The notes beneath the pieces are model-generated. The model ran no database searches. It had not been told where the DNA came from and saw only the letters and a program-made list of their open reading frames with translations. Positions 1-20,727 of a DNA stretch of 64,000 nt are shown here, one piece after another (position 1 is the stretch's first letter; every line of letters begins with the position of its first letter). Location of the stretch: the IMG/VR virus record IMGVR_UViG_3300048672_001051, positions 1 to 64,000 of that record; one strand, written 5' to 3'. The position numbers and the translations under genes are program-made.

Positions 1-2
1 CT

Positions 3-660
3 GCAATTGCATATGTTGCCACTGCGAGTTTGCCGCTGACTGTTATTGCCCCTGCCGGTGCTAATTTCGTTGCGTTTAATTTGGCAACAGATACAGCAAC
101 AAGTTGGTCAAATATCCAGTTTGAGTTAGGCGCGGTTGCCACGGCATATGTGCCGTTTGGTGCAAGCTACAAAATCGACGGCGGCGCGATACAAGATCTG
201 CCGCCGGAAACGATTGGCACAGTCGTAGGCTTGCAATCTGCGTTAGATGCAAAGCTAAACGCCGCCGATGTTTTAACAGCAAGTGCAAAGCCATATGACA
301 GGCTGACAGCATCTAAAAATATGTTTGCCGACTCAAATGTCGTGATGGGTAGCTATCTAAATAACGTCGGCGCTATCCGGTTACTAACAGGTTGGACGCG
401 GTCGGGGATCATCCCCGTTGTGGCAGGCCAAACTTACACTCTGTCGGGGAGCAGAAACCGTATAGGTCTGGCGTGGTTTGCCGCATCAACCGATCTGACA
501 GCAATCTCTTATGTCGCCACTGCGGGCTTACCACTCACTGTCACAGCACCGGCGGGGGCTAATTTTGTTGCGTTTAATTTGGCAACAGATACAGCAACGG
601 CGTGGTCAAATGTCCAGCTTGAGCTTGGGGCGGTTGCAACGGCGTATACGCCCTACGTTG
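3..660 (+). repeat. Intragenic tandem domain duplication, period 498 nt (166 aa)
   Basis: About 3-160 matches about 501-660; the 32-mer gttgcgtttaatttggcaacagatacagcaac is identical at 69-100 and 567-598. Confidence 0.9.
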
Positions 661-2141: not shown

Positions 2142-2158
2142 TATGTTATGGACTTACT

Positions 2159-4492: not shown

Positions 4493-4966
4493 ATGGTTTC
4501 TAGTTATATACTAGAAACCTATCCGTTTCATAAAGAACCGCATACATACTCTAATGGCTTGATTGTCTTAGGGTATGGCCACAGAATGTCCAAAGAAGAG
4601 CCTTATAAGCGTTTAACTAAAAATAAAGCTAAGGAGTTGTTTTATAAAGATAAAATTAAAATCGAGACTTATTTAAATAAGCGAAAACTATATACCTTAA
4701 CCCAAGAAGAATTTGACGTATTGTTCCATTTTATATATGATCACGGTGTGAACGTTACAAACTCATCTCGATTTGCACACTTCCTTTTAACTAAAAACAC
4801 GGAAGAGGCTTGTAAAGAAATTTTACGGTGGAAATCATATAGAGGCTTATATGATAAAAATCTAGCAGATAGAAGAGATTATGATTACAATATATTAAAA
4901 TTTAAACAATACGAAATAGGTATAACAAATGAATCCAAAAGTAGAAGAATTACTTTTAATGGCTAA
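4493..4966 (+). CDS. GH24 (phage lysozyme)-like protein, catalytic residues apparently lost
   Basis: LGYGH, LTQEEFDVLFHFIYDHG, ACKEILRW and LADRR match the GH24 scaffold, but the E/D/T triad positions read Y/Y/V. Start moved to ATG 4493. Confidence 0.7.
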   Translation: MVSSYILETYPFHKEPHTYSNGLIVLGYGHRMSKEEPYKRLTKNKAKELFYKDKIKIETYLNKRKLYTLTQEEFDVLFHFIYDHGVNVTNSSRFAHFLLTKNTEEACKEILRWKSYRGLYDKNLADRRDYDYNILKFKQYEIGITNESKSRRITFNG

Positions 4967-7052
4967 AAATCTTGGCCTTCAAAAAACAACAGAAGATGAG
5001 TCTAAAACTATCGCTGTAGTTACCGAACAACTTCCATCTGTCTACGAGACACCCACTTTAGGTTTAAACCTAAACACAACTTTCACTACAGATCATATAT
5101 TAACTTCTGTGAAAGTCCCCGCATATAAAAATTTAAATCTTACGGCCGATCAAACAGCCACTACACGAGCTCGTGTAGGTAGACTGACCACAGGTGCCAG
5201 CGCTGCAGTTCCGCTGGCTTGTAGGGGCAGTACATGCCCATTTAAAGCTACTTGCCTAGATGGTGACACTCTAGTTATGACTCCAGGCAAAAATGAATTT
5301 GTAAAAATAAAAAATCTAAAGAAAAACTCTCAAGTGTATTCATACAACGCTGAGACAGGTACGCTAGAGAAAGATAGGGTAGTTGCTATTTTAAGCCAAG
5401 GCATTAAAGAAGTATTTAAAATAACAACAGAGACAGGTAAAATATTAATTTGTACTGAAGACCATCCAATCTTGACAACAAATATAAATAATCAACCAAT
5501 TTTTCTTAAGTTGTGTACAGGCCTAACTGTAGGCTCAGCTATTTACGTCACAGACTATGATACAGATTTAATTGAGTTGAACGACTTTGGAGATCTTTTT
5601 GAAGATAAAATTAAAAGCATTTCATATGAAGGTTTAAAAGATGTTTATGATATTAGTGTTAATATAAATAATACATTTATTGCCAACGGCATAGCCGTCC
5701 ATAATTGCCAACCGACAGATGAGCAAGTACTTGTTGCAGATAAAGGTTATAAGAATATCCAAGACTTAGATCCTACAACAGATAAAGTTGTGACGATGAC
5801 TGAAAAGACTGGTGTTATAAATTATACAGGTAAGGAATTCACACTTCACCAGAGAAGTTACTCAGACACAATTTACACAATTAGTAATGGTATTAATTCT
5901 TACAAGTGTACTAAAGATCATATCTGCTATGCGACATTTAACAAAACTTCTATTAAAAAGCACTTAGTATATTTAATGAGAGTTGGCGACAAGTTTAGAG
6001 TTGGTGTCACAACATTAATGCAAGAGATGCCTAAGAATGGGCGTAGAGTAGGCCCTAGATACGCATTCGGATTGAGAGTTCGTGTAAACATGGAGAAAGC
6101 TGATTGTGCATGGATACTAGGTATTTATGACACAAGAGTTGAAGCTTTGTTAGACGAGGAATACTATTCAATTAAACTTAAAGCACCTAAGTCTTTATTT
6201 ATTGCTGATGATGCTGCGAGACATACCTCGTGGAACGGTAAAAGTAAGCGGGTAACTCAACAACAACTTGACGCCCAATTTAATAAGCTGAACGGTTCAG
6301 TTGAATTTTATGCTAACTTTTTAAAATCTAAAAACTTAGACATAGACTACCCATTCGTAACTCGAAATGGTGGTGCAGTAATACAGATAGGCCTGCCTAT
6401 GCACGTCCGCGCATGCAATTTGATTGACGGCTACATGGACATTGTTAGCGTAGATAGTGGTGTGCAAAGTACACAAAAATTACCATTAAAAGTAACTAGC
6501 AAAGATTTTTATCACGGTTCTGTATACTCTCTAGACGTAGCTGAAGACCATAATTATTTCACTACTGGCGGAATCTTAACTAAGAATTGCCCTTACTATG
6601 AAATTAATGCGCATCAAATAGGCGAAGACTGTTTAGTTGAAGCACAATTAATAGAATTTTATACTGCTAAATTTATAGAAGAATTTGCCATAGATCCAAA
6701 CTCAATAACTGAAGTACATCTAATATCTAGATTAGTAGAAATAACTATATACGAAATTAGAATGACTCAGTACTTAAAACTTAACGACCAAGATTTGATG
6801 GCTGATTTTGTCACAGGTACAGACCTTAACGGTGGCGCTATAACAAACAAAGGGGCGTCCATCGCGTTAGATGTCCAGGAAAAACTTTCTCGTCAGAAAA
6901 TGAAAATACTAGAGTCTTTGAATGGTACTAGAGAACGCAAGACTAAAATATTACTAGAAACTAAATCAACAGAGCGTGATAGTAGCTTGTCAGACTTAAG
7001 AAATAAACTAGACAGATTAGCGCAAGAAATTAATGCAAAGGTAGTTAACTAA
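4929..7052 (+). CDS. Cys-cluster protein (about 262 aa after splicing) interrupted by two tandem inteins; possibly packaging-related
   Basis: Exteins ...ACRGSTCPFKAT and CPYYEINAHQIGEDC... flank two complete HINT domains. C-terminal extein looks helical/coiled-coil. Confidence 0.8.
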   Translation: MNPKVEELLLMAKNLGLQKTTEDESKTIAVVTEQLPSVYETPTLGLNLNTTFTTDHILTSVKVPAYKNLNLTADQTATTRARVGRLTTGASAAVPLACRGSTCPFKATCLDGDTLVMTPGKNEFVKIKNLKKNSQVYSYNAETGTLEKDRVVAILSQGIKEVFKITTETGKILICTEDHPILTTNINNQPIFLKLCTGLTVGSAIYVTDYDTDLIELNDFGDLFEDKIKSISYEGLKDVYDISVNINNTFIANGIAVHNCQPTDEQVLVADKGYKNIQDLDPTTDKVVTMTEKTGVINYTGKEFTLHQRSYSDTIYTISNGINSYKCTKDHICYATFNKTSIKKHLVYLMRVGDKFRVGVTTLMQEMPKNGRRVGPRYAFGLRVRVNMEKADCAWILGIYDTRVEALLDEEYYSIKLKAPKSLFIADDAARHTSWNGKSKRVTQQQLDAQFNKLNGSVEFYANFLKSKNLDIDYPFVTRNGGAVIQIGLPMHVRACNLIDGYMDIVSVDSGVQSTQKLPLKVTSKDFYHGSVYSLDVAEDHNYFTTGGILTKNCPYYEINAHQIGEDCLVEAQLIEFYTAKFIEEFAIDPNSITEVHLISRLVEITIYEIRMTQYLKLNDQDLMADFVTGTDLNGGAITNKGASIALDVQEKLSRQKMKILESLNGTRERKTKILLETKSTERDSSLSDLRNKLDRLAQEINAKVVN
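5253..5705 (+). mobile_element. Mini-intein 1 (151 aa)
   Basis: Block A CLDGDTLV, block B CTEDHPIL, block F VYDISV, block G FIANGIAVHN followed by Cys; no endonuclease domain. Confidence 0.93.
5706..6587 (+). mobile_element. Intein 2 (294 aa) with a central GIY-YIG-like domain
   Basis: CQPTDEQVLV...KNIQDL, block B CTKDH, block F VYSLDV, end HNYFTTGGILTKN followed by Cys. Insert VYLMRVGDKFRVGVT...R...EALLDE. Confidence 0.88.
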
Positions 7053-7054
7053 TT

Positions 7055-7609
7055 ATGTTTATGAACCCAGTTGTGAGCCAAGAAGACCGCAAACTAATAG
7101 GGCACTTAGTTAAGAAGAAAAAACAGAGTGGTAAATACACACACGTTTACTACAATAAAAAAGATTCTAATAACAACTTAAAATATGTAACTGGTGAATT
7201 CTACTCTGCTAAGAATAAAGCACATATGACATATAGGTCATCTTACGAACTGAAGTTCTTACAAACATTAGAAAGTAATGATGACGTTGAAAGATATGCG
7301 TCTGAGTGCTTTACACTACCATATATAAATATTAGTGGTGTAAGAAAAACATATATACCAGACCTGTTAGTTGTATATAAGTCGGGTAAAATTGATATTT
7401 GTGAAATTAAGCCTAAGGCTATGCTAGTTAACGGTGACGTTCAAAGAAAAGCTGCAGCCTGTAGGCAGTTTATAATCTCTAATTTTAAAGGTATTGACTG
7501 CCAGTATAAATTTGTCACAGAAGATGACTTATTTATAAACAGTACGGATTATTCAAAGTTTTTAAAAAGTATAAAAGTAGGTAAAGAATACCATGGCAAC
7601 CAATCGTGA
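7055..7609 (+). CDS. TnsA-like PD-(D/E)xK endonuclease / head-completion nuclease (T4 gp4-like)
   Basis: YRSSYE, YASE.FTLPY, TYIPDLLV, EIKP motifs. Confidence 0.8.
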   Translation: MFMNPVVSQEDRKLIGHLVKKKKQSGKYTHVYYNKKDSNNNLKYVTGEFYSAKNKAHMTYRSSYELKFLQTLESNDDVERYASECFTLPYINISGVRKTYIPDLLVVYKSGKIDICEIKPKAMLVNGDVQRKAAACRQFIISNFKGIDCQYKFVTEDDLFINSTDYSKFLKSIKVGKEYHGNQS

Positions 7610-8984: not shown

Positions 8985-9746
8985 ATGAGTAACAGAGCTA
9001 AATTAGACGAATTACTTACGCTTAACCCAGATCTTAAATTTGACTCTAAACGTTTTGATACTTTAAAAGATAAAGATCAGAAAAAATTATTAAAAATGTT
9101 ATCCAGCGATGCCTCTAAAGGTAATGGTACTTATAAATTTACCGCAGGTGTTAATACAAACTTTGATTCAAAAGGTACAGCTGGCGTTTTAAACAAAGCA
9201 AAAGCTATGGTTAACCACACTATAGGGCCAAGTGCCGTAGAGGCCTACGCAAACTCTTTTGGATTTATGACCTCAGGTCAGCGTGCAATGAGTGCAAACT
9301 CATCAATGCTTGGTAAATTGTCCTACAAAGCAATACCTGCCTTTGGTGCATTTACAGCGCTATCTGGCGCTGTAGACGGTGAAGATCCGTTCGAGTATGT
9401 GGGTGAACAGATGGCCTTTGGTGGTGCTACGCAGGGTTATAGACTCGGCAGCACACTTGGAACTAGTACGATGGGTCGATTCGGTGCAGGCTTAGTTGGA
9501 GGAGCATTTATAGGCGCTGCTGTTTACGGAGGTTTTGCTGCGGCAAAAGACTTATCAAGTAACACTTCAAGTATAGCTAAAGCTGCCAAAAAAATGTACA
9601 CAAAAGAATTAAGTGTCGCATCATTTGACAATGATAAAACCTTAACAATGAGGCAAGCCGCATTAAGTAAGTTGAGTAATAGCGCGATAAACGACAGAGG
9701 ACTACTTTTAGGTAACGAAGCAATGATACTGCGAGGTTCATTATAA
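8985..9746 (+). CDS. Gly/Ala-rich hydrophobic protein, putative virion/ejected protein
   Basis: Glycine-zipper-like segments FGAGLVGGAFIGAAVYGGFAAA and AIPAFGAFTALSGAV; coupled to terL by TAATG. Confidence 0.5.
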   Translation: MSNRAKLDELLTLNPDLKFDSKRFDTLKDKDQKKLLKMLSSDASKGNGTYKFTAGVNTNFDSKGTAGVLNKAKAMVNHTIGPSAVEAYANSFGFMTSGQRAMSANSSMLGKLSYKAIPAFGAFTALSGAVDGEDPFEYVGEQMAFGGATQGYRLGSTLGTSTMGRFGAGLVGGAFIGAAVYGGFAAAKDLSSNTSSIAKAAKKMYTKELSVASFDNDKTLTMRQAALSKLSNSAINDRGLLLGNEAMILRGSL

Positions 9747-11941
9747 TGGCAGCAATTGATCTATTTGAGATGAGTTGGAAAGACTATTTAGAAATTAAAG
9801 GTTTTAATAAACAAAAAGAAGAAACGATGGCAGAGACGTGTAGGAAATGCCGAGAAGATCAACTTAAAAAACATAAAAAAATTACTATAAAATGTACTGG
9901 CGAGCGTACGATAGAGCATGAATTTACTCAGAAGTATGGTGAAAAAACAGCGAAGGCTGTATTAGCTCATTTGCAAGACGACCCGACAGAGATGCTGCAA
10001 GCGTCGTCTGCATACAATCCTTACGATTTTATGCGCGCAAATATTACAGACCCTAAATTGTTTAACCCACGCTGGTACCAAGAGAAAGCTGTACTTTGCT
10101 CTGCGACTAAAAAAGTTTTACGGATGGGTCGTCGCTGTATAGCAAAAGATGAACTTGTACTGATGGCCGATTACAGTTATAAAAAAATTCAAGATATAGA
10201 GCCTGGCGATTATGTAATAAGTAATAAGTATGACAAAGCTACTACACAAATAGTTACACATAAATACAATAACGGTGTTCAGCCGGTGTATGAAGTGCTC
10301 ACAGAGAAAAATCATAAAGTAAGATTAACCGAAGACCATGAAATTTTAACTAAACGAGGCTGGGTGACAATAGCTCAAGGCTTATCTAATGTTGACTATA
10401 TAAGTACTCTAGCCTCAAAAGAGTCTACAGATTATGAGTATTTACGAGTAAAGAGTATAACTCCGATAGGTCTTCAAGAAGTCTACGATATTACAGTTCC
10501 AGGTACTAATAACTTCACTGTAGAAGGACTGACGGTACACAATTGCGGTAAGACATACTCTATGGTTGTTGGTATGTTGCACAACTTACTAACAAAGCCT
10601 GGGTACACAGTACTAATAGCTGCACCGCAAATAACTATGATTGACGAGATAGTTAGCGCTTGCGAAGAAATCTGTAGGCAGCTTAAGACAGAGTATCCTA
10701 TAGTTAGAAATTCTTCTAGCCCTATTATAGAAATTGAGTTTAATAATGGCTCTATAATAAAAGGTGTTACAACAGCCAACGACGCAAAATCTGCTCGTGG
10801 TAAAAGCGCCGATTTGATTTGGCTAGAAGAAGCTGACTTTATTGAAAAGAAGGCCTTAAACTCTATTCTAGGGGTTTTGGCAGATAGGTCAGACATCGAA
10901 CTTTGGGTCTCTTCAACACCAATTGGTGAAAGAAATCTTTACAGTCTAGCTCAAAGACCAGATATAAGAGAATTTCACTATCCAACTTTTGTTGTTCCCC
11001 ACTACGAGTCTGAAAACTTAGACGAGTTTTTCCGTGGAGCAATGACACAGTCTGGTTATGTACAAGAAGTGATGGCTGAGTATGGTGTAGACGTTGATAG
11101 TGTTTTCCAGATCATGTTTATTGAGGAGAGTACTGAACTAGAGCGAGATCCTTACTATTCAGTAGAGAGTGTGTTAGCTAACAGACAGGATTTTATAGTC
11201 TTTATAGGTGTAGATTGGAACCATGATAAAGTTGGTACAAGAATTGTTGTAACAGCTTACTCACGTTCAAGAAATATTTTATTTATTGTTAAGAAAGAGA
11301 AAGTGTCATCAGTTGGTTGGACACAAGCATTAGCTGTGGAGTCTATAGTTAATTTAAACAGATTGTTTGCAGCTGATCATATATATGTAGATGAAGGTTT
11401 TGGTATAGGCCAAGTTACAGAGCTTAGAAAAAAAGGTGTAGAAGCCTATGGTAAAGTTGCAAACGATCATCCAGATTTAAAATTAGAGCAGACTGTATCA
11501 GTGCAATTTGGATCTAGTATAAAAATACATGATCCTATAACTGGTGAAGTTTACAGCAAGCGTGTTAAACAATACATGGTTGAGAATTTATCAAACACGC
11601 TAGAGAAGAAATCTTTATACTTCTCAAGTGTTGAAGATAATGATATAATCATGCAAATGAAGAACTATCTTATAAAAAATGTTTCTGTTAACGGAGCCAA
11701 GTCTTATAGTTTTAGAGATAAGCAAATAGCTGATCACGACTTAGATGCATTTATGTTGACTATCTACGCGTTTAATGTAGAATACGGGGATTATATAAGA
11801 CCACAAAGTCTAGAGTATGCGGCAGGATTTGGCAAAGAATTGCTAGAGCCTGCGCTGAAAATGGATAGTCTTTACGACGCAATTGGTGTATATGTCTCCC
11901 GTACATCAAAATCAAAATTTAAACCAAAACGTAAATGGTAG
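9746..11941 (+). CDS. terL: Terminase large subunit, intein-containing
   Basis: PRWYQ adenine-binding motif, Walker A RMGRR/CGKT split by an intein, Walker B LIWLEEAD, motif III SSTP, nuclease FIGVDWN / YVDEG / DHDLDA. Confidence 0.93.
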   Translation: MAAIDLFEMSWKDYLEIKGFNKQKEETMAETCRKCREDQLKKHKKITIKCTGERTIEHEFTQKYGEKTAKAVLAHLQDDPTEMLQASSAYNPYDFMRANITDPKLFNPRWYQEKAVLCSATKKVLRMGRRCIAKDELVLMADYSYKKIQDIEPGDYVISNKYDKATTQIVTHKYNNGVQPVYEVLTEKNHKVRLTEDHEILTKRGWVTIAQGLSNVDYISTLASKESTDYEYLRVKSITPIGLQEVYDITVPGTNNFTVEGLTVHNCGKTYSMVVGMLHNLLTKPGYTVLIAAPQITMIDEIVSACEEICRQLKTEYPIVRNSSSPIIEIEFNNGSIIKGVTTANDAKSARGKSADLIWLEEADFIEKKALNSILGVLADRSDIELWVSSTPIGERNLYSLAQRPDIREFHYPTFVVPHYESENLDEFFRGAMTQSGYVQEVMAEYGVDVDSVFQIMFIEESTELERDPYYSVESVLANRQDFIVFIGVDWNHDKVGTRIVVTAYSRSRNILFIVKKEKVSSVGWTQALAVESIVNLNRLFAADHIYVDEGFGIGQVTELRKKGVEAYGKVANDHPDLKLEQTVSVQFGSSIKIHDPITGEVYSKRVKQYMVENLSNTLEKKSLYFSSVEDNDIIMQMKNYLIKNVSVNGAKSYSFRDKQIADHDLDAFMLTIYAFNVEYGDYIRPQSLEYAAGFGKELLEPALKMDSLYDAIGVYVSRTSKSKFKPKRKW
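10136..10543 (+). mobile_element. Mini-intein (136 aa) in the TerL Walker A motif
   Basis: CIAKDELV...LTEDHEIL...VYDITV...FTVEGLTVHN followed by CGKT. Confidence 0.93.
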
Positions 11942-12652: not shown

Positions 12653-13209
12653 CTAACACATCAGCAGCGATGTTTACAGATCAAGCTGAAGTTATAAGAA
12701 TGCAAAAACAACGTGCAGAGCTGTACACTAGAATATACCAGTATGCTGCTGAGGATTTTACAAGTATAGCTGATTTTCAACAATTTTATAGTTTATCGGC
12801 TGTGTGGATGCAATCTCTTGAAACTCAATTGCAAACACTTATGCAAATAATCTCTGTACACGTTCACGATGTCCCGCCGCACTCACACCCGATTGAACCA
12901 CATACACATATTAGCTCAGCGCCAGGTTCGCCCACTAGTCCAAATATTGGTGGTGTAATCACGATGCCTACTGGTTTAGTTACTAACTTAAGTACAAACA
13001 CGTCTCAGATAGTCTGGCGGCCATTAGCTAAACCTACATTTATTAATACAACTTTAGCTATACCAAATATCGAAGGTAATAAGATAGTAGTAGGTGTTGG
13101 TGCTGAGGGTGATGTATTTCCAGAGCAGCGTAGGCTACGTGTAGCTCCAATATTACTTAAACCTACATTGCCGCCAATAATTAGCAGCGCTTTAAAAGGA
13201 TCTTTATGA
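12649..13209 (+). CDS. Hypothetical virion protein with a triple HxH motif
   Basis: Strong SD (aggtgaggag); helical N-terminus, then HVH..HSH..HTHISSAPGSPTSP. Confidence 0.55.
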   Translation: MTNTSAAMFTDQAEVIRMQKQRAELYTRIYQYAAEDFTSIADFQQFYSLSAVWMQSLETQLQTLMQIISVHVHDVPPHSHPIEPHTHISSAPGSPTSPNIGGVITMPTGLVTNLSTNTSQIVWRPLAKPTFINTTLAIPNIEGNKIVVGVGAEGDVFPEQRRLRVAPILLKPTLPPIISSALKGSL

Positions 13210-15080
13210 TTATAATCGAACCAATTGTAGAAAATACGTCGTCTGGTGAGGCGTTGCAACAACTACAACTTATAGTTAATACATTTACTGACGCCATAGA
13301 AAAAAATAATTGCAACTTAAAATTAGTTATAGGTTTTCACCAACAACTAGATGATGCCATACGAGATGTTGAAGATTTAAATGTAGCTTTGCAACCTGAT
13401 ATTAAAGGTACACTAAAAGCTACGCCGACCTACACTTACTACACGGTAGACCCTAGCAGGTTTATTGATGATGTCATAACAATAAACGACTCTTCTAAGT
13501 ATTTAAAGCAAAAGTGCATTGATTGTAAATTAAGGTTCCCTACTGTGAAATTTGACAACAGACTTAAATTTTCATTTGATAAACTTTTTGAAATAAACAT
13601 AGCCTACTCTAAAATTTTTACAGATTTCCAAAAGCCTAATATCTGTCACTTAGCTTATGCTATGGAGTCTAGTTGCATACCAGATTTAATAAAATTAATA
13701 GCACTACTTTTAAATGCATATATAGCAATACTAGCTTTTAAAAAGCTATCAGGTTTTACTTTAACTGCTTTCATAAAAGGACTTATACTTAGCCTTCTAG
13801 GTAAAATAATTGGAAGCATATCTGTCTCAGTAAACTTTTCAAATACAGGCTTACCTTGCGTGCTTGCTGCTATTGAGAATATTGCGTCAGCTATTCCAAG
13901 CCCTGATAATTTAAGATCACAGATTAGTGCAAACATAAGAGATGAAACTGGATTTTATGCAGACAAGCAAATTGGCAATAATACAGAACTTTTAAGACAA
14001 CTAAATAGTGGTGAAATAGCTCAAGAAGAGTATGATAAAATTATAACTGACTACCAACAGTCGGAAGTTATTGAGAAAAATTACTACAGTAATTTGCAAG
14101 AGTCTGTAGGCACTGGATTAAATAAATCTACTAGTTTTTTAAAAAGCATTGAAGGTAGCGTAAGTGATGTTGAAAATGGTATCTCAGATATATTTAAGTT
14201 TGCAAACGATGTTGTTACAGAAGCTCAAGCAGAATTAAATTCTTTTATTGAATCTATATTTGGAATAATAACTTATTTTGAATGTGAAATCAGCCGAACT
14301 ACTGCAGACTTTACAGTTATTTTAGAACTTGCAACAAAAATAACTAATTTAATAAATGCAATAAGTGCAATAGTTGTTGTTCTAGCTAAAAAACAACTAG
14401 GTGGTAAGCTGTGTAAAGAGACTAGCCTAAATTCTAAATATTCAAATGACACAACAGTTAATTTTACAGCAGAAGATATTAAAGATATTGTACAAGAGTA
14501 TACAGGTGTTATAAGTAAGTTAGAAGATGCAGACGGTATTAGTGTACTAATATACGAGCAGCCAATTAGGCAAATTCTTCCAAAGTTAGATTTATTTAGT
14601 TGTAATTTAGAGGAGTTTACTAAAGGCCATGAGTTAGATAATATTGTAGATGCAGTTGTTAAAGATCTAATTGAATCTGGAGGTAACTCTTCACTTAATC
14701 TTGATAATAATGTTGACGGAGACACCTACACACAGCCAGATAAGCAGTACATACGTAAATTCGACATACCAGGATATACTCCAAGTACTACAGACAGTGA
14801 AGAAGATTATGCAGATGCTGTTAAACAGCAAGCAGAAGAAACCTACTCAAATTATATAACAGAGGTTCGCGAGCTACTTGACTTTATTTACAATAACCCA
14901 TTAAACTCTGTCCAAGACGACTACACAGATAAAGAAGAAGTTACGGCCGAGTCTGATGACATAGTTAATATGTTTAATAACTTGAAAAGTAATAAAGTGA
15001 CTGAGAACTTATCTAATCAACAAAAAGAGTGCCGGGACATTGATGATGTTCTAGCCATGCTTAAAAATTTTACATTCTAA
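13206..15080 (+). CDS. Hypothetical protein with hydrophobic helices and an acidic C-terminus
   Basis: 624-aa ORF coupled by ATGA; LIKLIALLLNAYIAILAF and FIKGLILSLLGKIIG segments; scattered Cys. Confidence 0.6.
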   Translation: MIIIEPIVENTSSGEALQQLQLIVNTFTDAIEKNNCNLKLVIGFHQQLDDAIRDVEDLNVALQPDIKGTLKATPTYTYYTVDPSRFIDDVITINDSSKYLKQKCIDCKLRFPTVKFDNRLKFSFDKLFEINIAYSKIFTDFQKPNICHLAYAMESSCIPDLIKLIALLLNAYIAILAFKKLSGFTLTAFIKGLILSLLGKIIGSISVSVNFSNTGLPCVLAAIENIASAIPSPDNLRSQISANIRDETGFYADKQIGNNTELLRQLNSGEIAQEEYDKIITDYQQSEVIEKNYYSNLQESVGTGLNKSTSFLKSIEGSVSDVENGISDIFKFANDVVTEAQAELNSFIESIFGIITYFECEISRTTADFTVILELATKITNLINAISAIVVVLAKKQLGGKLCKETSLNSKYSNDTTVNFTAEDIKDIVQEYTGVISKLEDADGISVLIYEQPIRQILPKLDLFSCNLEEFTKGHELDNIVDAVVKDLIESGGNSSLNLDNNVDGDTYTQPDKQYIRKFDIPGYTPSTTDSEEDYADAVKQQAEETYSNYITEVRELLDFIYNNPLNSVQDDYTDKEEVTAESDDIVNMFNNLKSNKVTENLSNQQKECRDIDDVLAMLKNFTF

Positions 15081-15093
15081 GGTCTGCTCTTTA

Positions 15094-16713
15094 ATGATTT
15101 TAACAACGAACATAAATAAAACTAATAAAATACAGGATGCCGAAGGTCGGCTATTTAAACTCAAGAGTGGTGAAACACCGATACTGAGTAAACAAGCAAG
15201 AGCAGCCTACAATCAAGAACTATATGGCTACCAACGCTATTTCGAATACGACTTAGCGGAATCCTATAAAATAATGGACACTGAGTCTTTAGTGGCATCC
15301 GCTTTTAAGAAAAAAATAACCCTCATATTAAAAGAGGGTTTTACTTTTAAAAGTAAGATACCTGCAAATGTTACCTATATTAATAAGCGATTATCAGAGA
15401 TTGAATATGTTACCGGTAAAAAGTTTTCAGATATACTATATGATATTGTGCAAGATATGGTTGTTAATCATAATTGTTTTCTACTACAACACCGTTCAAT
15501 AAATTCTTCTACCGGATTGACTAGAGACGCTAGGCAACCACTGGCAGCATTGTATAGACTGATACTTACACAGGTAAGCCCTGTTCGTAACAAGTATAAA
15601 GAAACAATTGCATATAAATACAACATAAGTGATGTCGACTACTACGACGTAGCAGCTAAAGATATGTACCATATTCACTTGTGTAAAAAACCTGGGCTGA
15701 GTATCGGAACGCCGCCACTTGAAGCTGTTCGTGATGATATCTTATCTTTGCGCCAAATTGAAGAGTCGTTAGAGCGTCTCATATATAAGATGGCATCCCC
15801 AATAATACATTGTAAAGTTGGTAGTGACACCAAGCCTGCTGGTAGAATGGCAGACAACACTCCAGAGATAGATTATTATAATCGCCTATTATCTAATATG
15901 GATGAGAACGGTGGTATAACTACTTCCAACCGTGTAGAACTTAAGCTGATAGGTGCTGAGTCACAAGCTCTTAGAATGAGCGAGTATTTAACACACTATA
16001 AAAACAGAGTTTTAAGTGGCCTAAATATATCAGAAGTAGACTTAGGTGTTGGCAGCTCTACTACCGGAGGCGCTGCAGATTTAATCTCTCAAGCTTTAAA
16101 AGAAGATGTAGAGATGTATCAGAAAACTATTGCCAACTTTTTTACAGAGAAATTCTTTAACGATCTTTTATTGGAGTCAAGACGTTATTCTGGACAGACA
16201 ATAATACCTGACGATGAATATGTTAATTTCATGTTCAACACACCAAGTACTGATGTTCGCATCCGAGAAGAATCTCATCTGGCAAATATGGTTAGAAATA
16301 ACTTATTAACTGTAGAGAAGTTTGAGGAGGTTACTGGATATGACGCGCCAGACTATGCGCAAGAGCTATTGAAATTGCCACTACTTAAACTAAGTGAACC
16401 ATCGACTACAAATCAGTCTTTATCAAATACAGCGGAGCCTCAGAATCAGCATACTGCGCCTGAGACAAAAACTATTAAAGATAGTATTAACACATTATTA
16501 GACTCACCTAAAAATTCTGTGACCTTAAGTGATTTTTATTATCTAATTCAAGACGAGTTGACAGGTGTATTAGAAAAAGATACTATACATGAAATTGTAA
16601 CTGAAGCTTACGCTTATTTTAATAAATTTTCGACAAGTGATATTTCAAAAAACACTTTAGCTGAGAATATTACAAAACATATACTAGACCTAGTATTTAA
16701 CAGTATAAAATAG
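15094..16713 (+). CDS. Portal protein
   Basis: Size and position between terL and protease; GTPPLEAVRDDILSLRQIEE, PIIHCKVG, RVLSGL portal-like core. Confidence 0.8.
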   Translation: MILTTNINKTNKIQDAEGRLFKLKSGETPILSKQARAAYNQELYGYQRYFEYDLAESYKIMDTESLVASAFKKKITLILKEGFTFKSKIPANVTYINKRLSEIEYVTGKKFSDILYDIVQDMVVNHNCFLLQHRSINSSTGLTRDARQPLAALYRLILTQVSPVRNKYKETIAYKYNISDVDYYDVAAKDMYHIHLCKKPGLSIGTPPLEAVRDDILSLRQIEESLERLIYKMASPIIHCKVGSDTKPAGRMADNTPEIDYYNRLLSNMDENGGITTSNRVELKLIGAESQALRMSEYLTHYKNRVLSGLNISEVDLGVGSSTTGGAADLISQALKEDVEMYQKTIANFFTEKFFNDLLLESRRYSGQTIIPDDEYVNFMFNTPSTDVRIREESHLANMVRNNLLTVEKFEEVTGYDAPDYAQELLKLPLLKLSEPSTTNQSLSNTAEPQNQHTAPETKTIKDSINTLLDSPKNSVTLSDFYYLIQDELTGVLEKDTIHEIVTEAYAYFNKFSTSDISKNTLAENITKHILDLVFNSIK

Positions 16714-16722
16714 GACTTATAA

Positions 16723-18501
16723 ATGTATATTAATTCTAGAATTCAACTTAACGCTAGAATTCGAACCGACCCCTCCGTTACCTATGTCCCAATAGAAGAT
16801 TCTTCTCAGATTAGTGCAGTGCGCTTAGAAATAAAAGCGACACATGCTGGAAAAGTTAACGGTAATTATATTTTTTACACACCACGATCTATGCAGGTCG
16901 GTGTAAAAACTCTTGTCAACCCTTTTAGAAAACATTTGCAAAAGCTTCACAACGGTGAAGCTATAGGTGTCGTTACTGGCGCAAATTATGAAGAGTACAA
17001 AGATTTACCAGACGATTTTAAATTAATTGTCAATAAACTTAATCAAGCTTCTACTAAAGAAGAACTGTTAACGTCTGTTAAGGAGTTAACAAAGCATCCA
17101 ACTTTTAAATCGAAAGATTATAAAGGTGTAGGCTATCTTAAAGTAGAAGCGGAATTGTACGACAGTAAGACTATAAGTAATCTTAGAAAAGGTGATAAAG
17201 GTACTGTATCTATTGGCGGTAAGTCTAGCAGTGCATACTGTTCGGTTTGCGGAACAAGTGAGCGGCCTTGTGATTCACACACACCAGGTGAGACTTACAG
17301 AGACGAATTATGTTTTCACATATATGACAATATGTTGTTAGACCATATAGGGTTTGTTCCGAATCCTGCTGACAATGACACATACAGCGCTATCATTGAA
17401 GATAGTTTTAACGATAATGATATTCTGATAAAAGAATATATAATAAAAGATTCACAAGGTATACCTATGAATAAACTAACACTAGATATGTTAAAAGAAA
17501 AAGCTGCGGATATTCCAAGTTTAATTTCAACGTATTTTACAGATCCAGCGCAGCAAGAGATTGCTCAGCAAATTTACGACAGTTCTCTTAAAAATTCTCG
17601 AGCTTCGTCTTACGTCTTTGGCGCTGAAAAAATTCTAAATACTAAAAGTATTGTAGGCGCTTATTTAGCAAGTAAACTTGCAGAAGAATTGGAAGATGAC
17701 ACTGACAAACAAGTTATTGCAAGTCAAGTTAAAACTACACTAGACAAACTGTTAACAGAGGGTGAAACTTTAGATGATTGCCTAACTAGATTGCTAGTAC
17801 TACCTACCGAAGAACCAGCTGTAGTTGAGCCTGAAACGATTGATGCACCTATCGAGCCAGAAGTTGTGGTAGCCCCTGAAGTTGTAGCAACAGTCGAACA
17901 AGAAGCTGCGCCAATTCAAGATGATTCTAGTAAGATAACAATTGATGCTTGGGAGTTGATTAGTGCTAAAATTACTGATACTATAGTCTCACGTATTGAA
18001 GACTTGCTTAATGTTAAAAATGAAGTTAAGATAGAAGACCAAAAAGGTTTACTATTCCAACAACTTGATAACTTACGTAGTGAAGTTCAAAGTTCTGACG
18101 AACTAGTTCGTCAGTTGACAAGTGATTATGCTTCATCTATAATCCAGCAAATTCTTATTTTAAAGAATAAGCTAAATGACACTGAGTACAAAAACCGCTT
18201 ATCAAAAAGAGCTATAGATGTGCTTAAAGCAAATTTAGAAGACGCTTTAGAAGAAACTAATATTGAACCAAGTCAGTCTACGACTGGACAACAAACATTA
18301 ATAACAGCTACAATTGAAGATTCTTTAAACAATCAAGCATCTCCTCAAACTGTAGAACCTCCGGCTTCAATTACAAATACTTTTGATATTAAAGACGAAT
18401 TGCAAGTACGTGACTGGTTTACTGCCAAGACCAAAGAAAAAGGTTTAAGCGCTGCAGTGGCTGAATTCAACAAATTAAAAAACACTAAAACTAAAGGATA
18501 A
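16723..18501 (+). CDS. Prohead protease fused to a scaffold domain
   Basis: ATHAG, VSIGG..CSVCG..C.H, IGFVPNPAD (HK97/herpes-type maturation protease pattern); acidic, coiled-coil C-terminal half. Confidence 0.8.
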   Translation: MYINSRIQLNARIRTDPSVTYVPIEDSSQISAVRLEIKATHAGKVNGNYIFYTPRSMQVGVKTLVNPFRKHLQKLHNGEAIGVVTGANYEEYKDLPDDFKLIVNKLNQASTKEELLTSVKELTKHPTFKSKDYKGVGYLKVEAELYDSKTISNLRKGDKGTVSIGGKSSSAYCSVCGTSERPCDSHTPGETYRDELCFHIYDNMLLDHIGFVPNPADNDTYSAIIEDSFNDNDILIKEYIIKDSQGIPMNKLTLDMLKEKAADIPSLISTYFTDPAQQEIAQQIYDSSLKNSRASSYVFGAEKILNTKSIVGAYLASKLAEELEDDTDKQVIASQVKTTLDKLLTEGETLDDCLTRLLVLPTEEPAVVEPETIDAPIEPEVVVAPEVVATVEQEAAPIQDDSSKITIDAWELISAKITDTIVSRIEDLLNVKNEVKIEDQKGLLFQQLDNLRSEVQSSDELVRQLTSDYASSIIQQILILKNKLNDTEYKNRLSKRAIDVLKANLEDALEETNIEPSQSTTGQQTLITATIEDSLNNQASPQTVEPPASITNTFDIKDELQVRDWFTAKTKEKGLSAAVAEFNKLKNTKTKG

Positions 18502-18506
18502 TATAT

Positions 18507-19433
18507 ATGATACCATATAACCTAGCTCATAACCCAGGTATGCGCGAGAACTTTTACATCACCCCTGACAATAAGCTTGGAAAAGGTGATGACAGCCTAG
18601 GCCGGTTTCTAGTAGCATCATACTTGCCACTACAACGTTTCGATGATACTAAATCAGAATATGTTGTTATTTCATCTAACAAACCTGTAGCTTTTGCTAA
18701 CGGAGTTCTTGTACCAGCTGGTTACCGTCTAGAAGCTGCTGCTTATGCAAACGCCCTAGTAACTTCAGTTGCTGCTGCTGATGCTCAAGCAACTATCCGT
18801 TACACCGCTCTTGATGTTCAAGCCGGTATTCTAAACGCTAAAGGTGTTGCTGTTACTGCAAATGAACCAGTTGTTAAATCATTCTTCACTGGCACAACCC
18901 AAGATATTTTTGTATCGTACTTTGTCGGTATCATCAACTATAACGGCTTCCGTCGTGCTGGTGGTGATGGCACTAACCCTGCTCACTACCGCCAATATAA
19001 CTTCAGCGCCCAAGGCAGTGTCTCTTACAGTATGGACTATCACTACGAGTTCCCGTTGGTAAAAGATGATGCTACTCATGCAACTGCACCGTTAGTTGGC
19101 GTAGCTGCATTTATTGGTACTAACGTTAAAGCAGGTATGTTTGTAACTTATGACAAGCACTCAAACTTTATTGTTACCGATGTTGACTATAGTTATGGCA
19201 CTGTTGCTAAAGAGGCTGTTGTTGGCCAAATTAGTAAAGTATTTGTAGTTAAAGATATTAATACTGGTTCTGTAACTGCACCAATCAACCAACTTGACCG
19301 TGTAATAACTCCTGCTAACTTGTCTGGTAAAGTTCTTGACGAACTGCCTGGCGCTGGCAATGACGGCATCACACAAAAAGTTAGCTATGCAAACGCGTAC
19401 GGCTTGGTTCAGTTCGGAAACCAGACTCGCTAA
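18507..19433 (+). CDS. Head structural / decoration protein
   Basis: Between protease and capsid genes; codon usage like the capsid gene (gct/ggt/cgt/aac rich), suggesting high expression. Confidence 0.6.
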   Translation: MIPYNLAHNPGMRENFYITPDNKLGKGDDSLGRFLVASYLPLQRFDDTKSEYVVISSNKPVAFANGVLVPAGYRLEAAAYANALVTSVAAADAQATIRYTALDVQAGILNAKGVAVTANEPVVKSFFTGTTQDIFVSYFVGIINYNGFRRAGGDGTNPAHYRQYNFSAQGSVSYSMDYHYEFPLVKDDATHATAPLVGVAAFIGTNVKAGMFVTYDKHSNFIVTDVDYSYGTVAKEAVVGQISKVFVVKDINTGSVTAPINQLDRVITPANLSGKVLDELPGAGNDGITQKVSYANAYGLVQFGNQTR

Positions 19434-19440
19434 TTTACAG

Positions 19441-19469
19441 AGAGAGTCTATTTAAACAATAGACTTTCT
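19441..19469 (+). promoter_or_regulatory. Intergenic stem-loop upstream of the major capsid RBS
   Basis: agagagtctatt-taaac-aatagactttct: 12-bp stem with one G-U pair, no U-tract. Confidence 0.55.
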
Positions 19470-19494
19470 ACTATACTCTAAGGACTATTTAAAT

Positions 19495-20727
19495 ATGTTT
19501 AAACACAAAAATCTTACCGAAACAGAAAAAGAACTGTTGCCGCAAATTAAAAATATTACGCATGCTATGCGAAACGCTGGATATGACTCAGAAGGTAATT
19601 ATATTACCATTTCTGACGCTTTGAACGTACCTAATGCTGGTACTATTTTTAAGCGTGCTGTAACTGAAGTTATTCAAACAAGCATTCAGCCTAAACTAAT
19701 TGGGACTTCATTGCTGCGAGTTATCCGTAACTACACTAATGACAGCCAAATTATCATCCGTACTCTTGGTTCTATCGGTTCGATGGATTTTGAGATTCCA
19801 GAGGAAGGTGAATACCCAGAAGTTACTGCTGGCCGTGGACAACACTCAACAATTCGTTCTGACTTCCGTAAATACGGTGTCAAAATTAAAGTTAGTGAAG
19901 AAAGCATTAAGCAGTCTCAGTGGGACATCGTACAGATGTATATCATGGAAGCAATGAATGCGCTAGCACGTCATAAAGATAAGTTGATCTTCAACTTGAT
20001 CGAAGCTCAAGGTAAAGTTATTTTTGATAACTTGAATCCTGCTAGTGCTGAAATTGGCCGTACAGGCGGTCGCAACATCACTGGTGCTGGCAACGGCTCT
20101 ATGACTTTTGAAGATTTGATCGACATGTATTCATACATGGTTCTTCGCGGTTACCGTCCAAATGTGCTTTTAGTACACCCAATGCATTGGGCAATGTTTG
20201 CTAAAGATCCAATCATACGTGAATCTGGTGTAATGCAAGCTGATGTAAGTCAGTGGTTGAATAGCCAAGTTAACCCGTACAATGCATATGATCGTATCTC
20301 TGCTTGGAATGATGTGCAAACAGCGGCTGACGGCTCTCGTCGTGAACTAACCGCTGAAGAGCAGAATCTGTTGACTACTAGTCGAGGACCTGATCTATCT
20401 GGCGCTCGTGGTACACCTCTAGCTGGCTTGACTATCATGACCAGTGAAAACGTACCTTACGACTCAGTTACCAAAACTGCATCTGTATTGATGTTGGACA
20501 CTGAAAATACTGGCGTACTTGCTGTAGCTGAAGACCTAATGATTGACGAGTGGGATGAAAAAACCAACGATATCAAAGTTATCAAACTACGTGAAAAATA
20601 CGCACTTGCAACACTAGCTGGTGGTGAAGCCATCGCTATCGCTCGTAACGTATCTCTGGAACCTAACGAAATGTTCGTTAACCCACAAGTACATGTTGAC
20701 AACGTTCAACCTATTGTTCGTAAGTAA
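19495..20727 (+). CDS. Major capsid protein (HK97 fold)
   Basis: EIPEEGEYPE, KYGVKIKVSEESIKQSQWD, ALARHKD, PNVLLVHPMHW, KLREKYA; strongly biased codons; followed by a terminator. Confidence 0.9.
   Translation: MFKHKNLTETEKELLPQIKNITHAMRNAGYDSEGNYITISDALNVPNAGTIFKRAVTEVIQTSIQPKLIGTSLLRVIRNYTNDSQIIIRTLGSIGSMDFEIPEEGEYPEVTAGRGQHSTIRSDFRKYGVKIKVSEESIKQSQWDIVQMYIMEAMNALARHKDKLIFNLIEAQGKVIFDNLNPASAEIGRTGGRNITGAGNGSMTFEDLIDMYSYMVLRGYRPNVLLVHPMHWAMFAKDPIIRESGVMQADVSQWLNSQVNPYNAYDRISAWNDVQTAADGSRRELTAEEQNLLTTSRGPDLSGARGTPLAGLTIMTSENVPYDSVTKTASVLMLDTENTGVLAVAEDLMIDEWDEKTNDIKVIKLREKYALATLAGGEAIAIARNVSLEPNEMFVNPQVHVDNVQPIVRK

What the first reader, a model, noticed from the sequence alone, without database searches (positions are those of the whole stretch)
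15094..20727. Recurrent I-x-D motif in portal, protease/scaffold and capsid: a possible Asp-specific maturation protease
Seen: I counted 11 I-x-D sites in the 592-aa protease/scaffold (PIEDS, HIYDN, IIEDS, IIKDS, QIYDS, PIQDD, KITDT, RIEDL, KIEDQ, TIEDS, DIKDE). PIEDS sits just before, and IIEDS/IIKDS just after, the protease domain. The portal has KIQDA (aa 13-15) and TIKDS after its C-terminal linker; the capsid has TISDA (D41, nt 19615) ending a plausible propeptide. Known: T4 gp21 cleaves after I/L-x-E and phiKZ gp175 after S/A/G-x-E. Inference: this enzyme cuts after Asp (I-x-D/S,A), a different specificity that could also flag head-internal cargo.
Basis: partly seen in the sequence, partly recalled or inferred. 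Interest (0 to 1): 0.7.

Follow-up and report, generated by a model that had tools for sequence, protein, structure and literature searches.

The report
Asp-type cleavage motif in phage head
A giant freshwater phage, and a large family of its relatives, carry a repeated Ile/Val-x-Asp-Ser motif at the domain boundaries of their head protease-scaffold, portal and capsid proteins, which most likely marks cuts made after aspartate by the head-maturation protease, whereas the motif-defined phage head proteases in the papers read here (T4, phiKZ, 201phi2-1, SPN3US) all cut after glutamate.

Summary
All 11 I-x-D sites exist in the 592-aa protease/scaffold (expected 3.6). That protein ranks first of 273 genome ORFs for the motif, but single-genome statistics are only modest.

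The decisive evidence is comparative.
- In 140 representatives (clustered at 50% identity) of a family of at least 1683 clusters, I-x-D is the most enriched gapped pair and D-S the most enriched adjacent pair.
- In their scaffold halves [IV]-x-D-[SA] occurs 3.9 times more often than expected. The same pattern with E, N, S or T at that position is not enriched.
They sit inside otherwise variable sequence.
- The sister Bacillus-phage clade (0305phi8-36, KLEB27-3, Edson, WH1) has Glu at the homologous capsid and N-terminal sites, and [LV]-x-E-[SA] repeats in its scaffold. P1 therefore switches in concert.

The N-terminal domain models as a T4 gp21/herpesvirus-protease fold with invariant H76 and S163.

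Verdict: a predicted Asp-specific variant of a known maturation system, not biochemically proven. The motif alone cannot flag cargo proteins.

The parts
16723..18501 (+). Protease/scaffold fusion gene (592 aa), with 11 I-x-D and 19 [IVL]-x-D sites
   Evidence: ORF; motif counts; syntenic with 0305phi8-36 gp123 'protease/scaffold' and ME3 gp20; 65 close homologs and 1683 family clusters.
16801..17403 (+). Protease domain, residues 27-227. Candidate catalytic residues: H76 (nt 16948), S163 (nt 17209), D217 (nt 17371). Zn-like cluster: C173, C176, C183, H186.
   Evidence: AF2 model pLDDT 75. Best solved-structure matches are T4 gp21 5jbl (Z 8.9), VZV protease (Z 8.5) and HCMV protease (Z 6.3). 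BFVD matches are prohead proteases and XkdF. Invariance. Coordinates.
16798..16800 (+). D26 of PIED|S: predicted N-terminal autoprocessing site just before the protease domain
   Evidence: [IV]-x-D-[SA] present in 18/18 non-redundant homologs. The column holds Glu in all five E-type relatives.
17401..17403 (+). D227 of IIED|S: predicted cut at the C-terminal end of the protease domain
   Evidence: Present in 18/18 representatives; nearly invariant D. The last modelled strand ends at residue 227.
17449..17451 (+). D243 of IIKD|S: second site after the protease domain, 5 residues before the nested start
   Evidence: Present in 12/18 representatives.
17467..18501 (+). Probable nested scaffold gene (M249 to G592, 344 aa), in frame within the fusion gene
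   Evidence: The Met is conserved in all relatives. AAGG/GGAG lies 8-10 nt upstream in all 9 metagenome-type loci examined even where the encoded residues differ, and matches the SD of neighbouring genes. 0305phi8-36 has an annotated gp123* at the same place.
17920..17922 (+). D400 of PIQD|D, in a Pro/Glu/Val-rich linker
   Evidence: Present in 8/18 representatives.
18037..18039 (+). D439 of KIED|Q: predicted scaffold cleavage site
   Evidence: Present in 17/18 representatives. Motif conservation 0.88 against flank identity 0.24.
18319..18321 (+). D533 of TIED|S, in the C-terminal low-complexity linker
   Evidence: Present in 14/18 representatives.
18394..18396 (+). D558 of DIKD|E: last predicted site, 34 residues from the C-terminus
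   Evidence: Invariant D in alignment A1; 17/18 representatives.
15094..16713 (+). Portal protein (539 aa). Predicted sites: KIQD15|A (nt 15136-15138) and TIKD463|S (nt 16480-16482).
   Evidence: Pfam/PHROG portal. D15 and D463 are nearly invariant in 10 relatives with flank identity 0.23-0.27, and rank top in the 'island conservation' test.
19495..20727 (+). Major capsid protein (410 aa). The predicted propeptide is residues 1-41 (nt 19495-19617), cut at TISD41|ALNVPNAG.
   Evidence: Phage_capsid_4. D41 is invariant in 33 diverse homologs and conserved as [IVL]-x-D-[AST]-[LIM] in about 120. The model places D41 between an N-terminal helix (9-26) and the N-arm helix (48-62). The homologous residue is Glu in 0305phi8-36, KLEB27-3, Edson, WH1 and MTATph1.
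18507..19433 (+). 308-aa ORF in the position of the 0305phi8-36 head-decoration candidate; no I-x-D, so not a predicted substrate
   Evidence: Synteny with gp124; counts.
13206..15080 (+). Conserved Cys-rich 624-aa ORF upstream of the portal, 10 I-x-D sites; substrate status unclear
   Evidence: 10 vs 5.2 expected. The conserved [IVL]-x-D sites at D57, D559 and D614 have hydrophobic P1' residues, unlike the scaffold sites.

Best explanation
**What it is.** The window is the start of a 229.7-kb freshwater jumbo phage of the ME3 / 0305phi8-36 lineage. Gene 16723-18501 encodes a prohead serine protease of the herpesvirus-assemblin / T4 gp21 fold. Its candidate catalytic residues are H76, S163 and probably D217, and it carries a small Zn-like Cys3His insert. 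The protease is fused to a C-terminal scaffolding region. That region is probably also made on its own from a nested start at M249.

**How it most likely works (inferred).**
1. The fusion co-assembles inside the procapsid.
2. It then cuts after Asp in [I/V/(L)]-x-D|[S/A/N/E/Q]-(hydrophobic) motifs.
3. It frees itself at D26 and at D227/D243.
4. It chops the scaffold at D400, D439, D533 and D558 so the pieces can leave.
5. It removes a 41-residue propeptide from the capsid protein, so the mature capsid begins ALNVPNAG.
6. It trims the portal at D15 and D463.

**Shown versus inferred.**
- Shown: gene identities, the fold, the motif's enrichment, its Asp specificity and positional conservation, and the concerted D/E difference between clades.
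- Inferred: that the motif is cleaved, that the scissile bond follows Asp, and the catalytic triad.
For: 1. Family-wide, Asp-specific enrichment.
   - In 140 representatives (clustered at 50% identity), I-x-D is the top gapped pair (1195 vs 508) and D-S the top adjacent pair.
   - In their scaffold halves [IV]xD is 2.15x expected (135/140 above expectation) and [IV]xD[SA] is 3.9x. [IV]xE is 1.06x, [IV]xE[SA] 0.8x, and N/S/T at P1 0.6-1.1x.
   - The same signal appears in 18 closer representatives whose scaffold halves are 26% identical.
2. Positional conservation inside variable sequence.
   - D26 18/18, D227 18/18, D439 17/18, D558 17/18, D533 14/18, D243 12/18.
   - Capsid D41 is invariant. 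Portal D15 and D463 are nearly invariant.
   - These sites top an 'island conservation' ranking over 14 proteins.
3. The sites sit at domain boundaries and termini, as in known systems.
4. Concerted switch. 0305phi8-36, KLEB27-3, Edson and WH1 have Glu at the homologous capsid site and at the N-terminal protease site. Their scaffolds are enriched in [IVL]xE[SA] (5-9 vs about 2) with 0-1 [IVL]xD[SA]. The window, ME3 and three metagenomic relatives show the reverse.
5. Fold: T4 gp21 Z 8.9 and VZV protease Z 8.5. H76 and S163 are invariant across the family.
6. The P3-aliphatic / P1 / P1'-Ser layout matches T4 I/L-x-E. It also matches herpes [VLI]-x-A|S (own knowledge).
Against: - There is no experimental terminus for any member. 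The phage is known only from a metagenome.
- Single-genome statistics are modest.
- The D/E difference is essentially one phylogenetic split, not many independent switches.
- MTATph1 and two metagenomic relatives (L008, L010) have mixed D/E scaffold counts.
- Conserved [IVL]-x-D also occurs in plainly structural contexts: the terminase, portal D62 and D214, scaffold D147, D325 and D507. Conservation alone therefore does not mark a site.
- No Pfam or PDB sequence-profile link to known protease families was found.
- A protease-peptide co-fold gave no answer.
Confidence: 0.7

Rival explanations
1. The [IV]-x-D-S motif is a short linear docking motif that is not cleaved. It might be a repeated contact between scaffold, portal and capsid inner surface, or an exosite for the protease.
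For: The motif lies in disordered linkers and is repeated, as binding motifs often are. No cleavage data exist.
Against: The sites sit exactly at both ends of the protease domain and at the capsid propeptide/N-arm junction, where known phages cut. The strict Asp with a small P1' and an aliphatic P3 copies the layout of known clan sites. The concerted D/E change between clades is what a change in the S1 pocket predicts.
Confidence: 0.1
2. The enrichment is a compositional or secondary-structure by-product (helix N-cap, coiled-coil heptads) of helical scaffolding proteins.
For: Scaffolds are helical, and I-x-x-x-I is also enriched. Genome-wide I.D is 1.28x expected.
Against: Other N-cap residues (S, T, N) at that position are not enriched (0.6-1.1x). 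Glu, the commoner coiled-coil residue, is at 1.06x. Several sites lie in Pro/Glu/Thr-rich non-helical linkers. The same motif is invariant in two non-scaffold proteins.
Confidence: 0.04
3. The motif is a processing signal, but either the scissile bond is not after Asp (for example after the P1' Ser) or the enzyme is a different phage or host protease.
For: Nothing here fixes the bond. Staphylococcal phage 80alpha uses a host protease, Prp.
Against: The protease gene is fused to the most motif-rich substrate and flanked by two motifs. The motif travels with this protease family over 1683 clusters from many environments. P3/P1 spacing equals that of the T4 and phiKZ-type enzymes, which cut after the acidic residue.
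Confidence: 0.12

Closest known systems
T4 gp21 prohead protease (MEROPS S77) and its substrates gp22, gp23 and others
   Same: Best structural match to the modelled domain (5jbl, Z 8.9). It cuts many head proteins and chops the scaffold at a short motif with an aliphatic P3 and an acidic P1, I/L-x-E. The triad is His-Ser-Asp.
   Different: P1 is Asp, not Glu. The protease is fused to the scaffold instead of being a separate gene. It has a Cys3His insert. No detectable sequence-profile similarity. The portal is also a predicted substrate.
phiKZ gp175 / SPN3US gp245 (MEROPS S80) giant-phage prohead proteases
   Same: Jumbo-phage head proteases that process the capsid, the portal and themselves at a 3-residue motif ending in an acidic residue; small P1' (Ser) preference.
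   Different: Those cut after Glu with a small P3 (S/A/G-x-E, A-x-E). Here P3 is aliphatic and P1 is Asp. No extensive cargo processing is evident here.
P2 gpO protease-scaffold fusion
   Same: N-terminal serine protease domain plus C-terminal scaffold in one polypeptide. It cleaves the capsid protein N-terminus (31 aa), itself and presumably the portal. The 0305phi8-36 homolog was originally recognised with a gpO model.
   Different: gpO is about half the size. No repeated Asp motif is reported for it in the paper read here. No sequence match was obtained here.
0305phi8-36 gp123/gp123* (protease with nested scaffold) and the Bacillus phages KLEB27-3, Edson and WH1
   Same: Same gene order (portal, protease/scaffold, decoration candidate, capsid), homologous portal and capsid proteins, and a nested scaffold start.
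   Different: Their repeated motif and their homologous capsid and N-terminal sites carry Glu, [LV]-x-E-[SA], not Asp.
Herpesvirus assemblin (MEROPS S21), UL26/UL26.5
   Same: Same fold (VZV Z 8.5, HCMV Z 6.3). Protease fused to scaffold with a nested scaffold gene. Sites have an aliphatic P3 and Ser at P1' ([VLI]-x-A|S, own knowledge).
   Different: P1 is Ala there and Asp here. The triad there is Ser-His-His. The host range is eukaryotic.

Membership tests
Clan SH prohead/assemblin serine proteases (S21, S77, S78, S80) | Herpesvirus-protease / T4 gp21 fold | tested here: met
   AF2 model (pLDDT 75). VIA-align top hits are T4 gp21 (Z 8.9), VZV protease (Z 8.5) and HCMV protease (Z 6.3), above unrelated rows. 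BFVD Foldseek hits to annotated prohead proteases reach E 1e-14. Foldseek against PDB was weak.
Clan SH prohead/assemblin serine proteases (S21, S77, S78, S80) | Conserved catalytic Ser and His (plus Asp or His) | tested here: inconclusive
   H76 and S163 are invariant and D217 is 93% conserved over 115 D- and E-type sequences. Spacing is compatible with the gp245 triad H77/S153/D178 once the 25-30 aa Cys insert is discounted. No residue-level superposition was available.
Clan SH prohead/assemblin serine proteases (S21, S77, S78, S80) | Match to the curated sequence models (Pfam Peptidase_S77/S78/S80, XkdF) | tested here: not met
   No Pfam protease family at E<=10 for any of 25 members or for the whole protein. 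hhalign against T4 gp21 gave probability 0.6%. PDB profile search found nothing relevant.
Clan SH prohead/assemblin serine proteases (S21, S77, S78, S80) | Gene lies between the portal and major capsid genes in the late operon | tested here: met
   Portal 15094-16713, this gene 16723-18501, capsid 19495-20727. The same order is seen in the 6 relatives whose locus reaches the capsid gene plus ME3, 0305phi8-36 and three other E-type phages; two short contigs end before it.
Clan SH prohead/assemblin serine proteases (S21, S77, S78, S80) | Proteolytic activity on head proteins | not testable with these tools
   Needs virion mass spectrometry or a recombinant assay.
Protease-scaffold fusions with nested scaffold gene (P2 gpO, lambda C/Nu3, herpes UL26/UL26.5, 0305phi8-36 gp123/123*) | N-terminal protease domain followed by a C-terminal scaffolding region in one ORF | tested here: inconclusive
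   The protease domain ends at about residue 227. The rest is 365 aa of linker-rich, poorly conserved sequence with a conserved C-terminal end. Its scaffold role is inferred from synteny with gp123 and was not tested.
Protease-scaffold fusions with nested scaffold gene (P2 gpO, lambda C/Nu3, herpes UL26/UL26.5, 0305phi8-36 gp123/123*) | In-frame internal translation start giving free scaffold | tested here: inconclusive
   Conserved Met (M249, nt 17467) with an SD-like AAGG/GGAG 8-10 nt upstream in all 9 metagenome-type loci examined, kept despite amino-acid changes. There are no expression data.
T4-type [L/I]-x-E cleavage specificity | Aliphatic P3, any P2 | tested here: met
   P3 is I, V or L at every conserved site.
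T4-type [L/I]-x-E cleavage specificity | Glu at P1 | tested here: not met
   P1 is Asp wherever a site exists. [IV]xE[SA] is at 0.8x expectation, against 3.9x for Asp.

The most novel reading that the evidence does not exclude
A very large, so far undescribed family of phage head proteases (at least 1683 clusters at 50% identity) is Asp-specific. This P1 preference is rare among proteases (own knowledge). Its sister clade is Glu-specific. If so, a few S1-pocket changes re-programmed a whole set of substrates at once. The switch could be adaptive, for example as an escape from host immune 'tripwires' that sense I/L-x-E-cutting prohead proteases (such a CBASS sensor is described in the preprint read).
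Probability: 0.12. Interest if true: 0.8.

Novelty: new variant of a known kind. Interest (0 to 1): 0.6.

Why it matters
- **Scope of what is known.** Prohead proteases are essential and are the best-conserved link between tailed phages and herpesviruses. Their specificity is known for only a handful. In the papers read here, all motif-defined phage examples (T4, phiKZ, 201phi2-1, SPN3US) cut after Glu.
- **What this adds.** It is a sequence-only but well-replicated prediction that a large environmental family, including the cultivable Acinetobacter phage ME3, uses Asp.
- **Immediately testable outputs.** It yields exact mature termini for the capsid, portal and scaffold fragments.
- **Natural experiment.** It supplies a D-type/E-type pair of clades for mapping the S1 pocket.
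- **Annotation.** It improves annotation of propeptides, a nested scaffold gene and the true start of the protease gene in hundreds of metagenomic jumbo-phage genomes.
- **Host immunity.** It bears on how host defences that sense phage protease activity could be matched or evaded.

Tried and rejected
**Searches and predictions that led nowhere**
- Megablast of the region against phage genomes found nothing.
- Peptide-pattern scan of IMG/VR found no relative.
- Pfam on the protease found no protease family, only sub-threshold DUF hits.
- PDB sequence-profile search gave only chance hits.
- hhalign of the family profile against T4 gp21 gave probability 0.6%.
- Foldseek against PDB was weak (E about 0.4 for herpes proteases). 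The relation rests on VIA-align and BFVD.
- Co-folding the protease domain with the capsid peptide 28-56 scored 0.02, 'no answer'. This is not evidence either way.

**Literature**
- The primary proteomics papers on 0305phi8-36, phiKZ and 201phi2-1 are not held.
- No paper was found on MTATph1, KLEB27-3 or WH1.
- No paper linking a prohead protease to cleavage after Asp was found.

**Ideas rejected**
- Simple conservation of [IVL]-x-D as a site marker: rejected, because the terminase and structural cores also have conserved ones.
- Motif-only cargo prediction: rejected (26 vs 20.5 expected).
- Helix N-cap or coiled-coil by-product: rejected.
- Co-variation of protease residues with D/E preference gave only P54, L136 and G137 against G/A, R and E/P. 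With five E-type sequences from one clade this is too confounded to interpret.

Full report
**Context.** The window is the first 64 kb of a single 229,656-bp contig assembled from a freshwater metagenome. Weaker relatives occur in freshwater and wastewater runs.

The genes around the finding form a classical head module.
- A large terminase that contains an intein, then three small ORFs.
- A conserved 624-aa ORF at 13206-15080.
- The portal at 15094-16713 (Pfam Phage_portal; PHROG portal, E 7.5e-30).
- A 592-aa ORF at 16723-18501.
- A 308-aa ORF at 18507-19433.
- The major capsid protein at 19495-20727 (Phage_capsid_4).

The nearest cultured relative is Acinetobacter jumbo phage vB_AbaM_ME3, at 36-37% identity. 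More distant are Bacillus phage 0305phi8-36 and its kin. In 0305phi8-36 the syntenic gene is annotated 'protease/scaffold', with a nested scaffold gene gp123*.

Against 2000 shuffles per protein:

| Protein | Observed | Expected | p |
|---|---|---|---|
| Protease/scaffold | 11 | 3.6 | 0.0015 |
| Portal | 7 | 2.5 | 0.009 |
| Upstream 624-aa ORF | 10 | 5.2 | 0.026 |
| Capsid | 2 | 1.9 | not significant |

- Head-module ORFs together have 30 vs 14.2. The rest of the window has 97 vs 78. After correcting for that 1.24x background, p=0.005.
- Among 273 ORFs of the whole genome, the protease/scaffold ranks first for I.D, [IV].D[SA] and [IVL].D[SANQE], and the portal ranks fifth for I.D.
- With a motif chosen by eye and 273 ORFs, this alone would be suggestive, not compelling.

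**Replication in relatives.**
- Among the 65 closest homologs, I-x-D stays 2.5-4 times over-represented at 35% identity. In other sub-clades V-x-D or L-x-D takes its place.
- In the scaffold halves of 18 non-redundant homologs (median pairwise identity 26%), an unbiased scan of all residue pairs puts D-S first among adjacent pairs (88 vs 33). It puts I-x-D (68 vs 27) and V-x-D (76 vs 36) first among gapped pairs.
- A profile of the protease domain found 1683 clusters at E<=1e-3 in a 1.84-billion-protein library.
- In 140 full-length representatives of these, clustered at 50% identity:
  - I-x-D is again the most enriched gapped pair (1195 vs 508) and D-S the most enriched adjacent pair;
  - [IVL]-x-D is the single top pair in 77 of 140 proteins.
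- Restricted to their C-terminal parts:

| Pattern | Observed vs expected |
|---|---|
| [IV]xD | 2.15x (135 of 140 above expectation) |
| [IV]xD[SA] | 3.9x |
| [IV]xE | 1.06x |
| [IV]xE[SA] | 0.8x |
| N, S or T in place of D | 0.6-1.1x |

The signal is therefore real, family-wide and specific to Asp. It is not a helix-capping or coiled-coil by-product.

**Where the sites are.** In the 18 representatives an [IV(L)]-x-D-[S/A/N/E/Q] motif is found at the following positions.

| Site | Representatives with the motif | Location |
|---|---|---|
| D26 | 18/18 | just before the first strand of the protease domain |
| D227 | 18/18 | end of the last strand |
| D243 | 12/18 | just after the protease domain |
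| D400 | 8/18 | scaffold linker |
| D439 | 17/18 | scaffold |
| D533 | 14/18 | scaffold linker |
| D558 | 17/18 | scaffold linker |

- Wherever a site exists, P1 is Asp. P1' is mostly Ser and P2' is often Leu/Ile/Val.
- D400, D533 and D558 lie in Pro/Glu/Thr-rich, otherwise unalignable linkers.
- Three conserved L-x-D sites (D147, D325, D507) have different P1' residues and look structural.
- In the capsid protein D41 is invariant in 33 diverse homologs. The motif [IVL]-x-D-[AST]-[LIM] holds in about 120.
- The capsid model puts D41 between an N-terminal helix (9-26) and the N-arm helix (48-62).
- In the portal, D15 and D463 (just after a conserved P-x-NQH) are nearly invariant while their flanks are 23-27% identical.
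- I ranked all [IVL]-x-D sites of 14 proteins by motif conservation minus flank conservation. Portal D463 and D15, scaffold D507, D439 and D227, and capsid D178 and D41 came out on top. Terminase sites came far lower.

**A natural specificity switch.** The Bacillus phages have Glu at the homologous capsid position.

| Phage | Capsid site |
|---|---|
| KLEB27-3 | KVTVTE\|ALTTADANILIP |
| Edson, WH1 | FVSVTE\|ALTT |
| 0305phi8-36 | EVNLRE\|FMATPS |
| Moorella phage MTATph1 | WVTVRE\|ALST |
| This window | YITISD\|ALNVPNAG |
| ME3 | KFSIQD\|ALSTPN |

- The protease/scaffold proteins of the four Bacillus phages carry 5-9 [IVL]xE[SA] (expected 1.3-2.6) and 0-1 [IVL]xD[SA].
- The window, ME3 and three metagenomic relatives carry 5-8 [IVL]xD[SA] (expected about 1.3) and 0-3 with Glu.
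- The N-terminal site column is Asp in 90% of 110 D-type sequences and Glu in all five E-type ones.
- The portal N-terminal site of 0305phi8-36 aligns as VLEE.
- A residue that changes in concert in three different proteins, and in repeated linker motifs, is what one expects if one enzyme reads it. This is the strongest argument for 'cleavage site' over 'structural motif'.
- Caveats: it is essentially one phylogenetic split. MTATph1, L008 and L010 have mixed scaffold counts.

**The enzyme.**
- Residues 27-227 model with pLDDT 75.
- The best solved-structure matches are T4 gp21 (5jbl, Z 8.9) and varicella-zoster protease (Z 8.5), followed by HCMV and KSHV proteases.
- Predicted viral structures annotated as prohead protease or XkdF match with probability 1.0.
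- H76 and S163 are invariant and D217 (P-A-D) is 93% conserved across D- and E-type sequences. The T4/SPN3US triad is His-Ser-Asp.
- C173, C176, C183 and H186 form a conserved Zn-like insert between Ser and Asp.
- No sequence model of any known protease family matches. I therefore claim membership at fold level only.
- A conserved Met (M249, nt 17467) lies five residues after the D243 site. It is preceded in all nine metagenome-type loci examined by AAGG/GGAG at -8 to -10, even where the encoded residues differ. This matches the SD of neighbouring genes and suggests a nested scaffold gene like gp123*.
- The public gene call for this ORF starts at V33 (P0001, 560 aa). That call would delete the conserved D26 site. 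All homologs support the ATG at 16723.

**Mechanism proposed (inferred).**
1. The fusion enters the procapsid through its scaffold part.
2. It releases itself at D26 and at D227/D243.
3. It fragments the scaffold at D400, D439, D533 and D558 into pieces of about 25-160 residues.
4. It removes the 41-residue capsid propeptide.
5. It trims 15 N-terminal and 76 C-terminal residues from the portal.

This copies what P2 gpO does: it cleaves the capsid N-terminus, itself and presumably the portal. It also copies T4 gp21, which chops the scaffold and removes propeptides at I/L-x-E.

**What is not supported.** The motif cannot by itself flag cargo. [IV].D[SA][ILVMF] occurs 26 times in the genome against 20.5 expected, and [IV].D[SA] 70 against 68.9. 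The 624-aa upstream ORF has conserved [IVL]-x-D sites, but with hydrophobic P1' residues. Its status is open.

**Novelty.**
- In the literature I could read, every phage prohead protease with a defined motif cuts after Glu: T4, phiKZ, 201phi2-1 and SPN3US.
- Two full-text searches linking prohead proteases to Asp found nothing.
An earlier report for the E-type clade cannot be excluded.
- I rate this a new variant of a known kind. It has strong comparative support and no biochemical proof.

Noticed in passing
window 17467-18501: Probable nested, in-frame scaffold gene starting at conserved M249. An SD-like AAGG/GGAG lies 8-10 nt upstream and is conserved in 9 loci despite amino-acid changes. 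It is analogous to 0305phi8-36 gp123*.
   Followed up: partly
window 17239-17280 (C173, C176, C183, H186 of the protease domain): A C-x2-C-x6-C-x2-H cluster is inserted between the candidate catalytic Ser and Asp. It is about 99% conserved across D- and E-type family members and looks like a zinc knuckle. No such insert came up in the material read here on T4 gp21 or the herpesvirus proteases.
   Followed up: partly
window 16723-16821: The public gene call for this ORF (P0001, 560 aa) starts at V33. This omits 32 residues that include the conserved PIED|S site. Homolog N-termini support the ATG at 16723.
   Followed up: yes
L013, L014, L015, L002 (Bacillus phages KLEB27-3, Edson, WH1, 0305phi8-36): The sister clade uses [LV]-x-E-[SA] at homologous capsid, protease N-terminal and scaffold positions. 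This predicts T4-like Glu specificity there.
   Followed up: partly
window 13206-15080: A 624-aa ORF conserved throughout the group (ME3_18 homolog), with 8 invariant Cys and a long hydrophobic stretch (about residues 160-215). It matches no family. It is mildly I-x-D-rich (10 vs 5.2), and its conserved D57, D559 and D614 motifs have hydrophobic P1' residues.
   Followed up: partly
window 9746-11941 and 4929-7052: The large terminase carries an intein (Intein_splicing, residues about 147-266). The 707-aa helicase-like ORF carries Intein_splicing plus a second Hint hit. Relatives have inteins at the same genes.
   Followed up: partly
window 1-2141: The first 2 kb have 51% G+C against about 35% for the rest of the window. 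ORF 30-2141 (703 aa) matches no PHROG or Pfam family.
   Followed up: no
window 2096-4000 and 7055-7609: A 634-aa ORF has YadA-head repeats and a PHROG 'peptidase' hit (fibre-like). A 184-aa TnsA-like endonuclease ORF follows the intein-bearing gene.
   Followed up: no
window 42467-48931: A 2154-aa ORF has transglycosylase and M23-type peptidase segments. It is probably a tape-measure or lytic tail protein. It is not enriched in I-x-D (7 vs 7.3).
   Followed up: no
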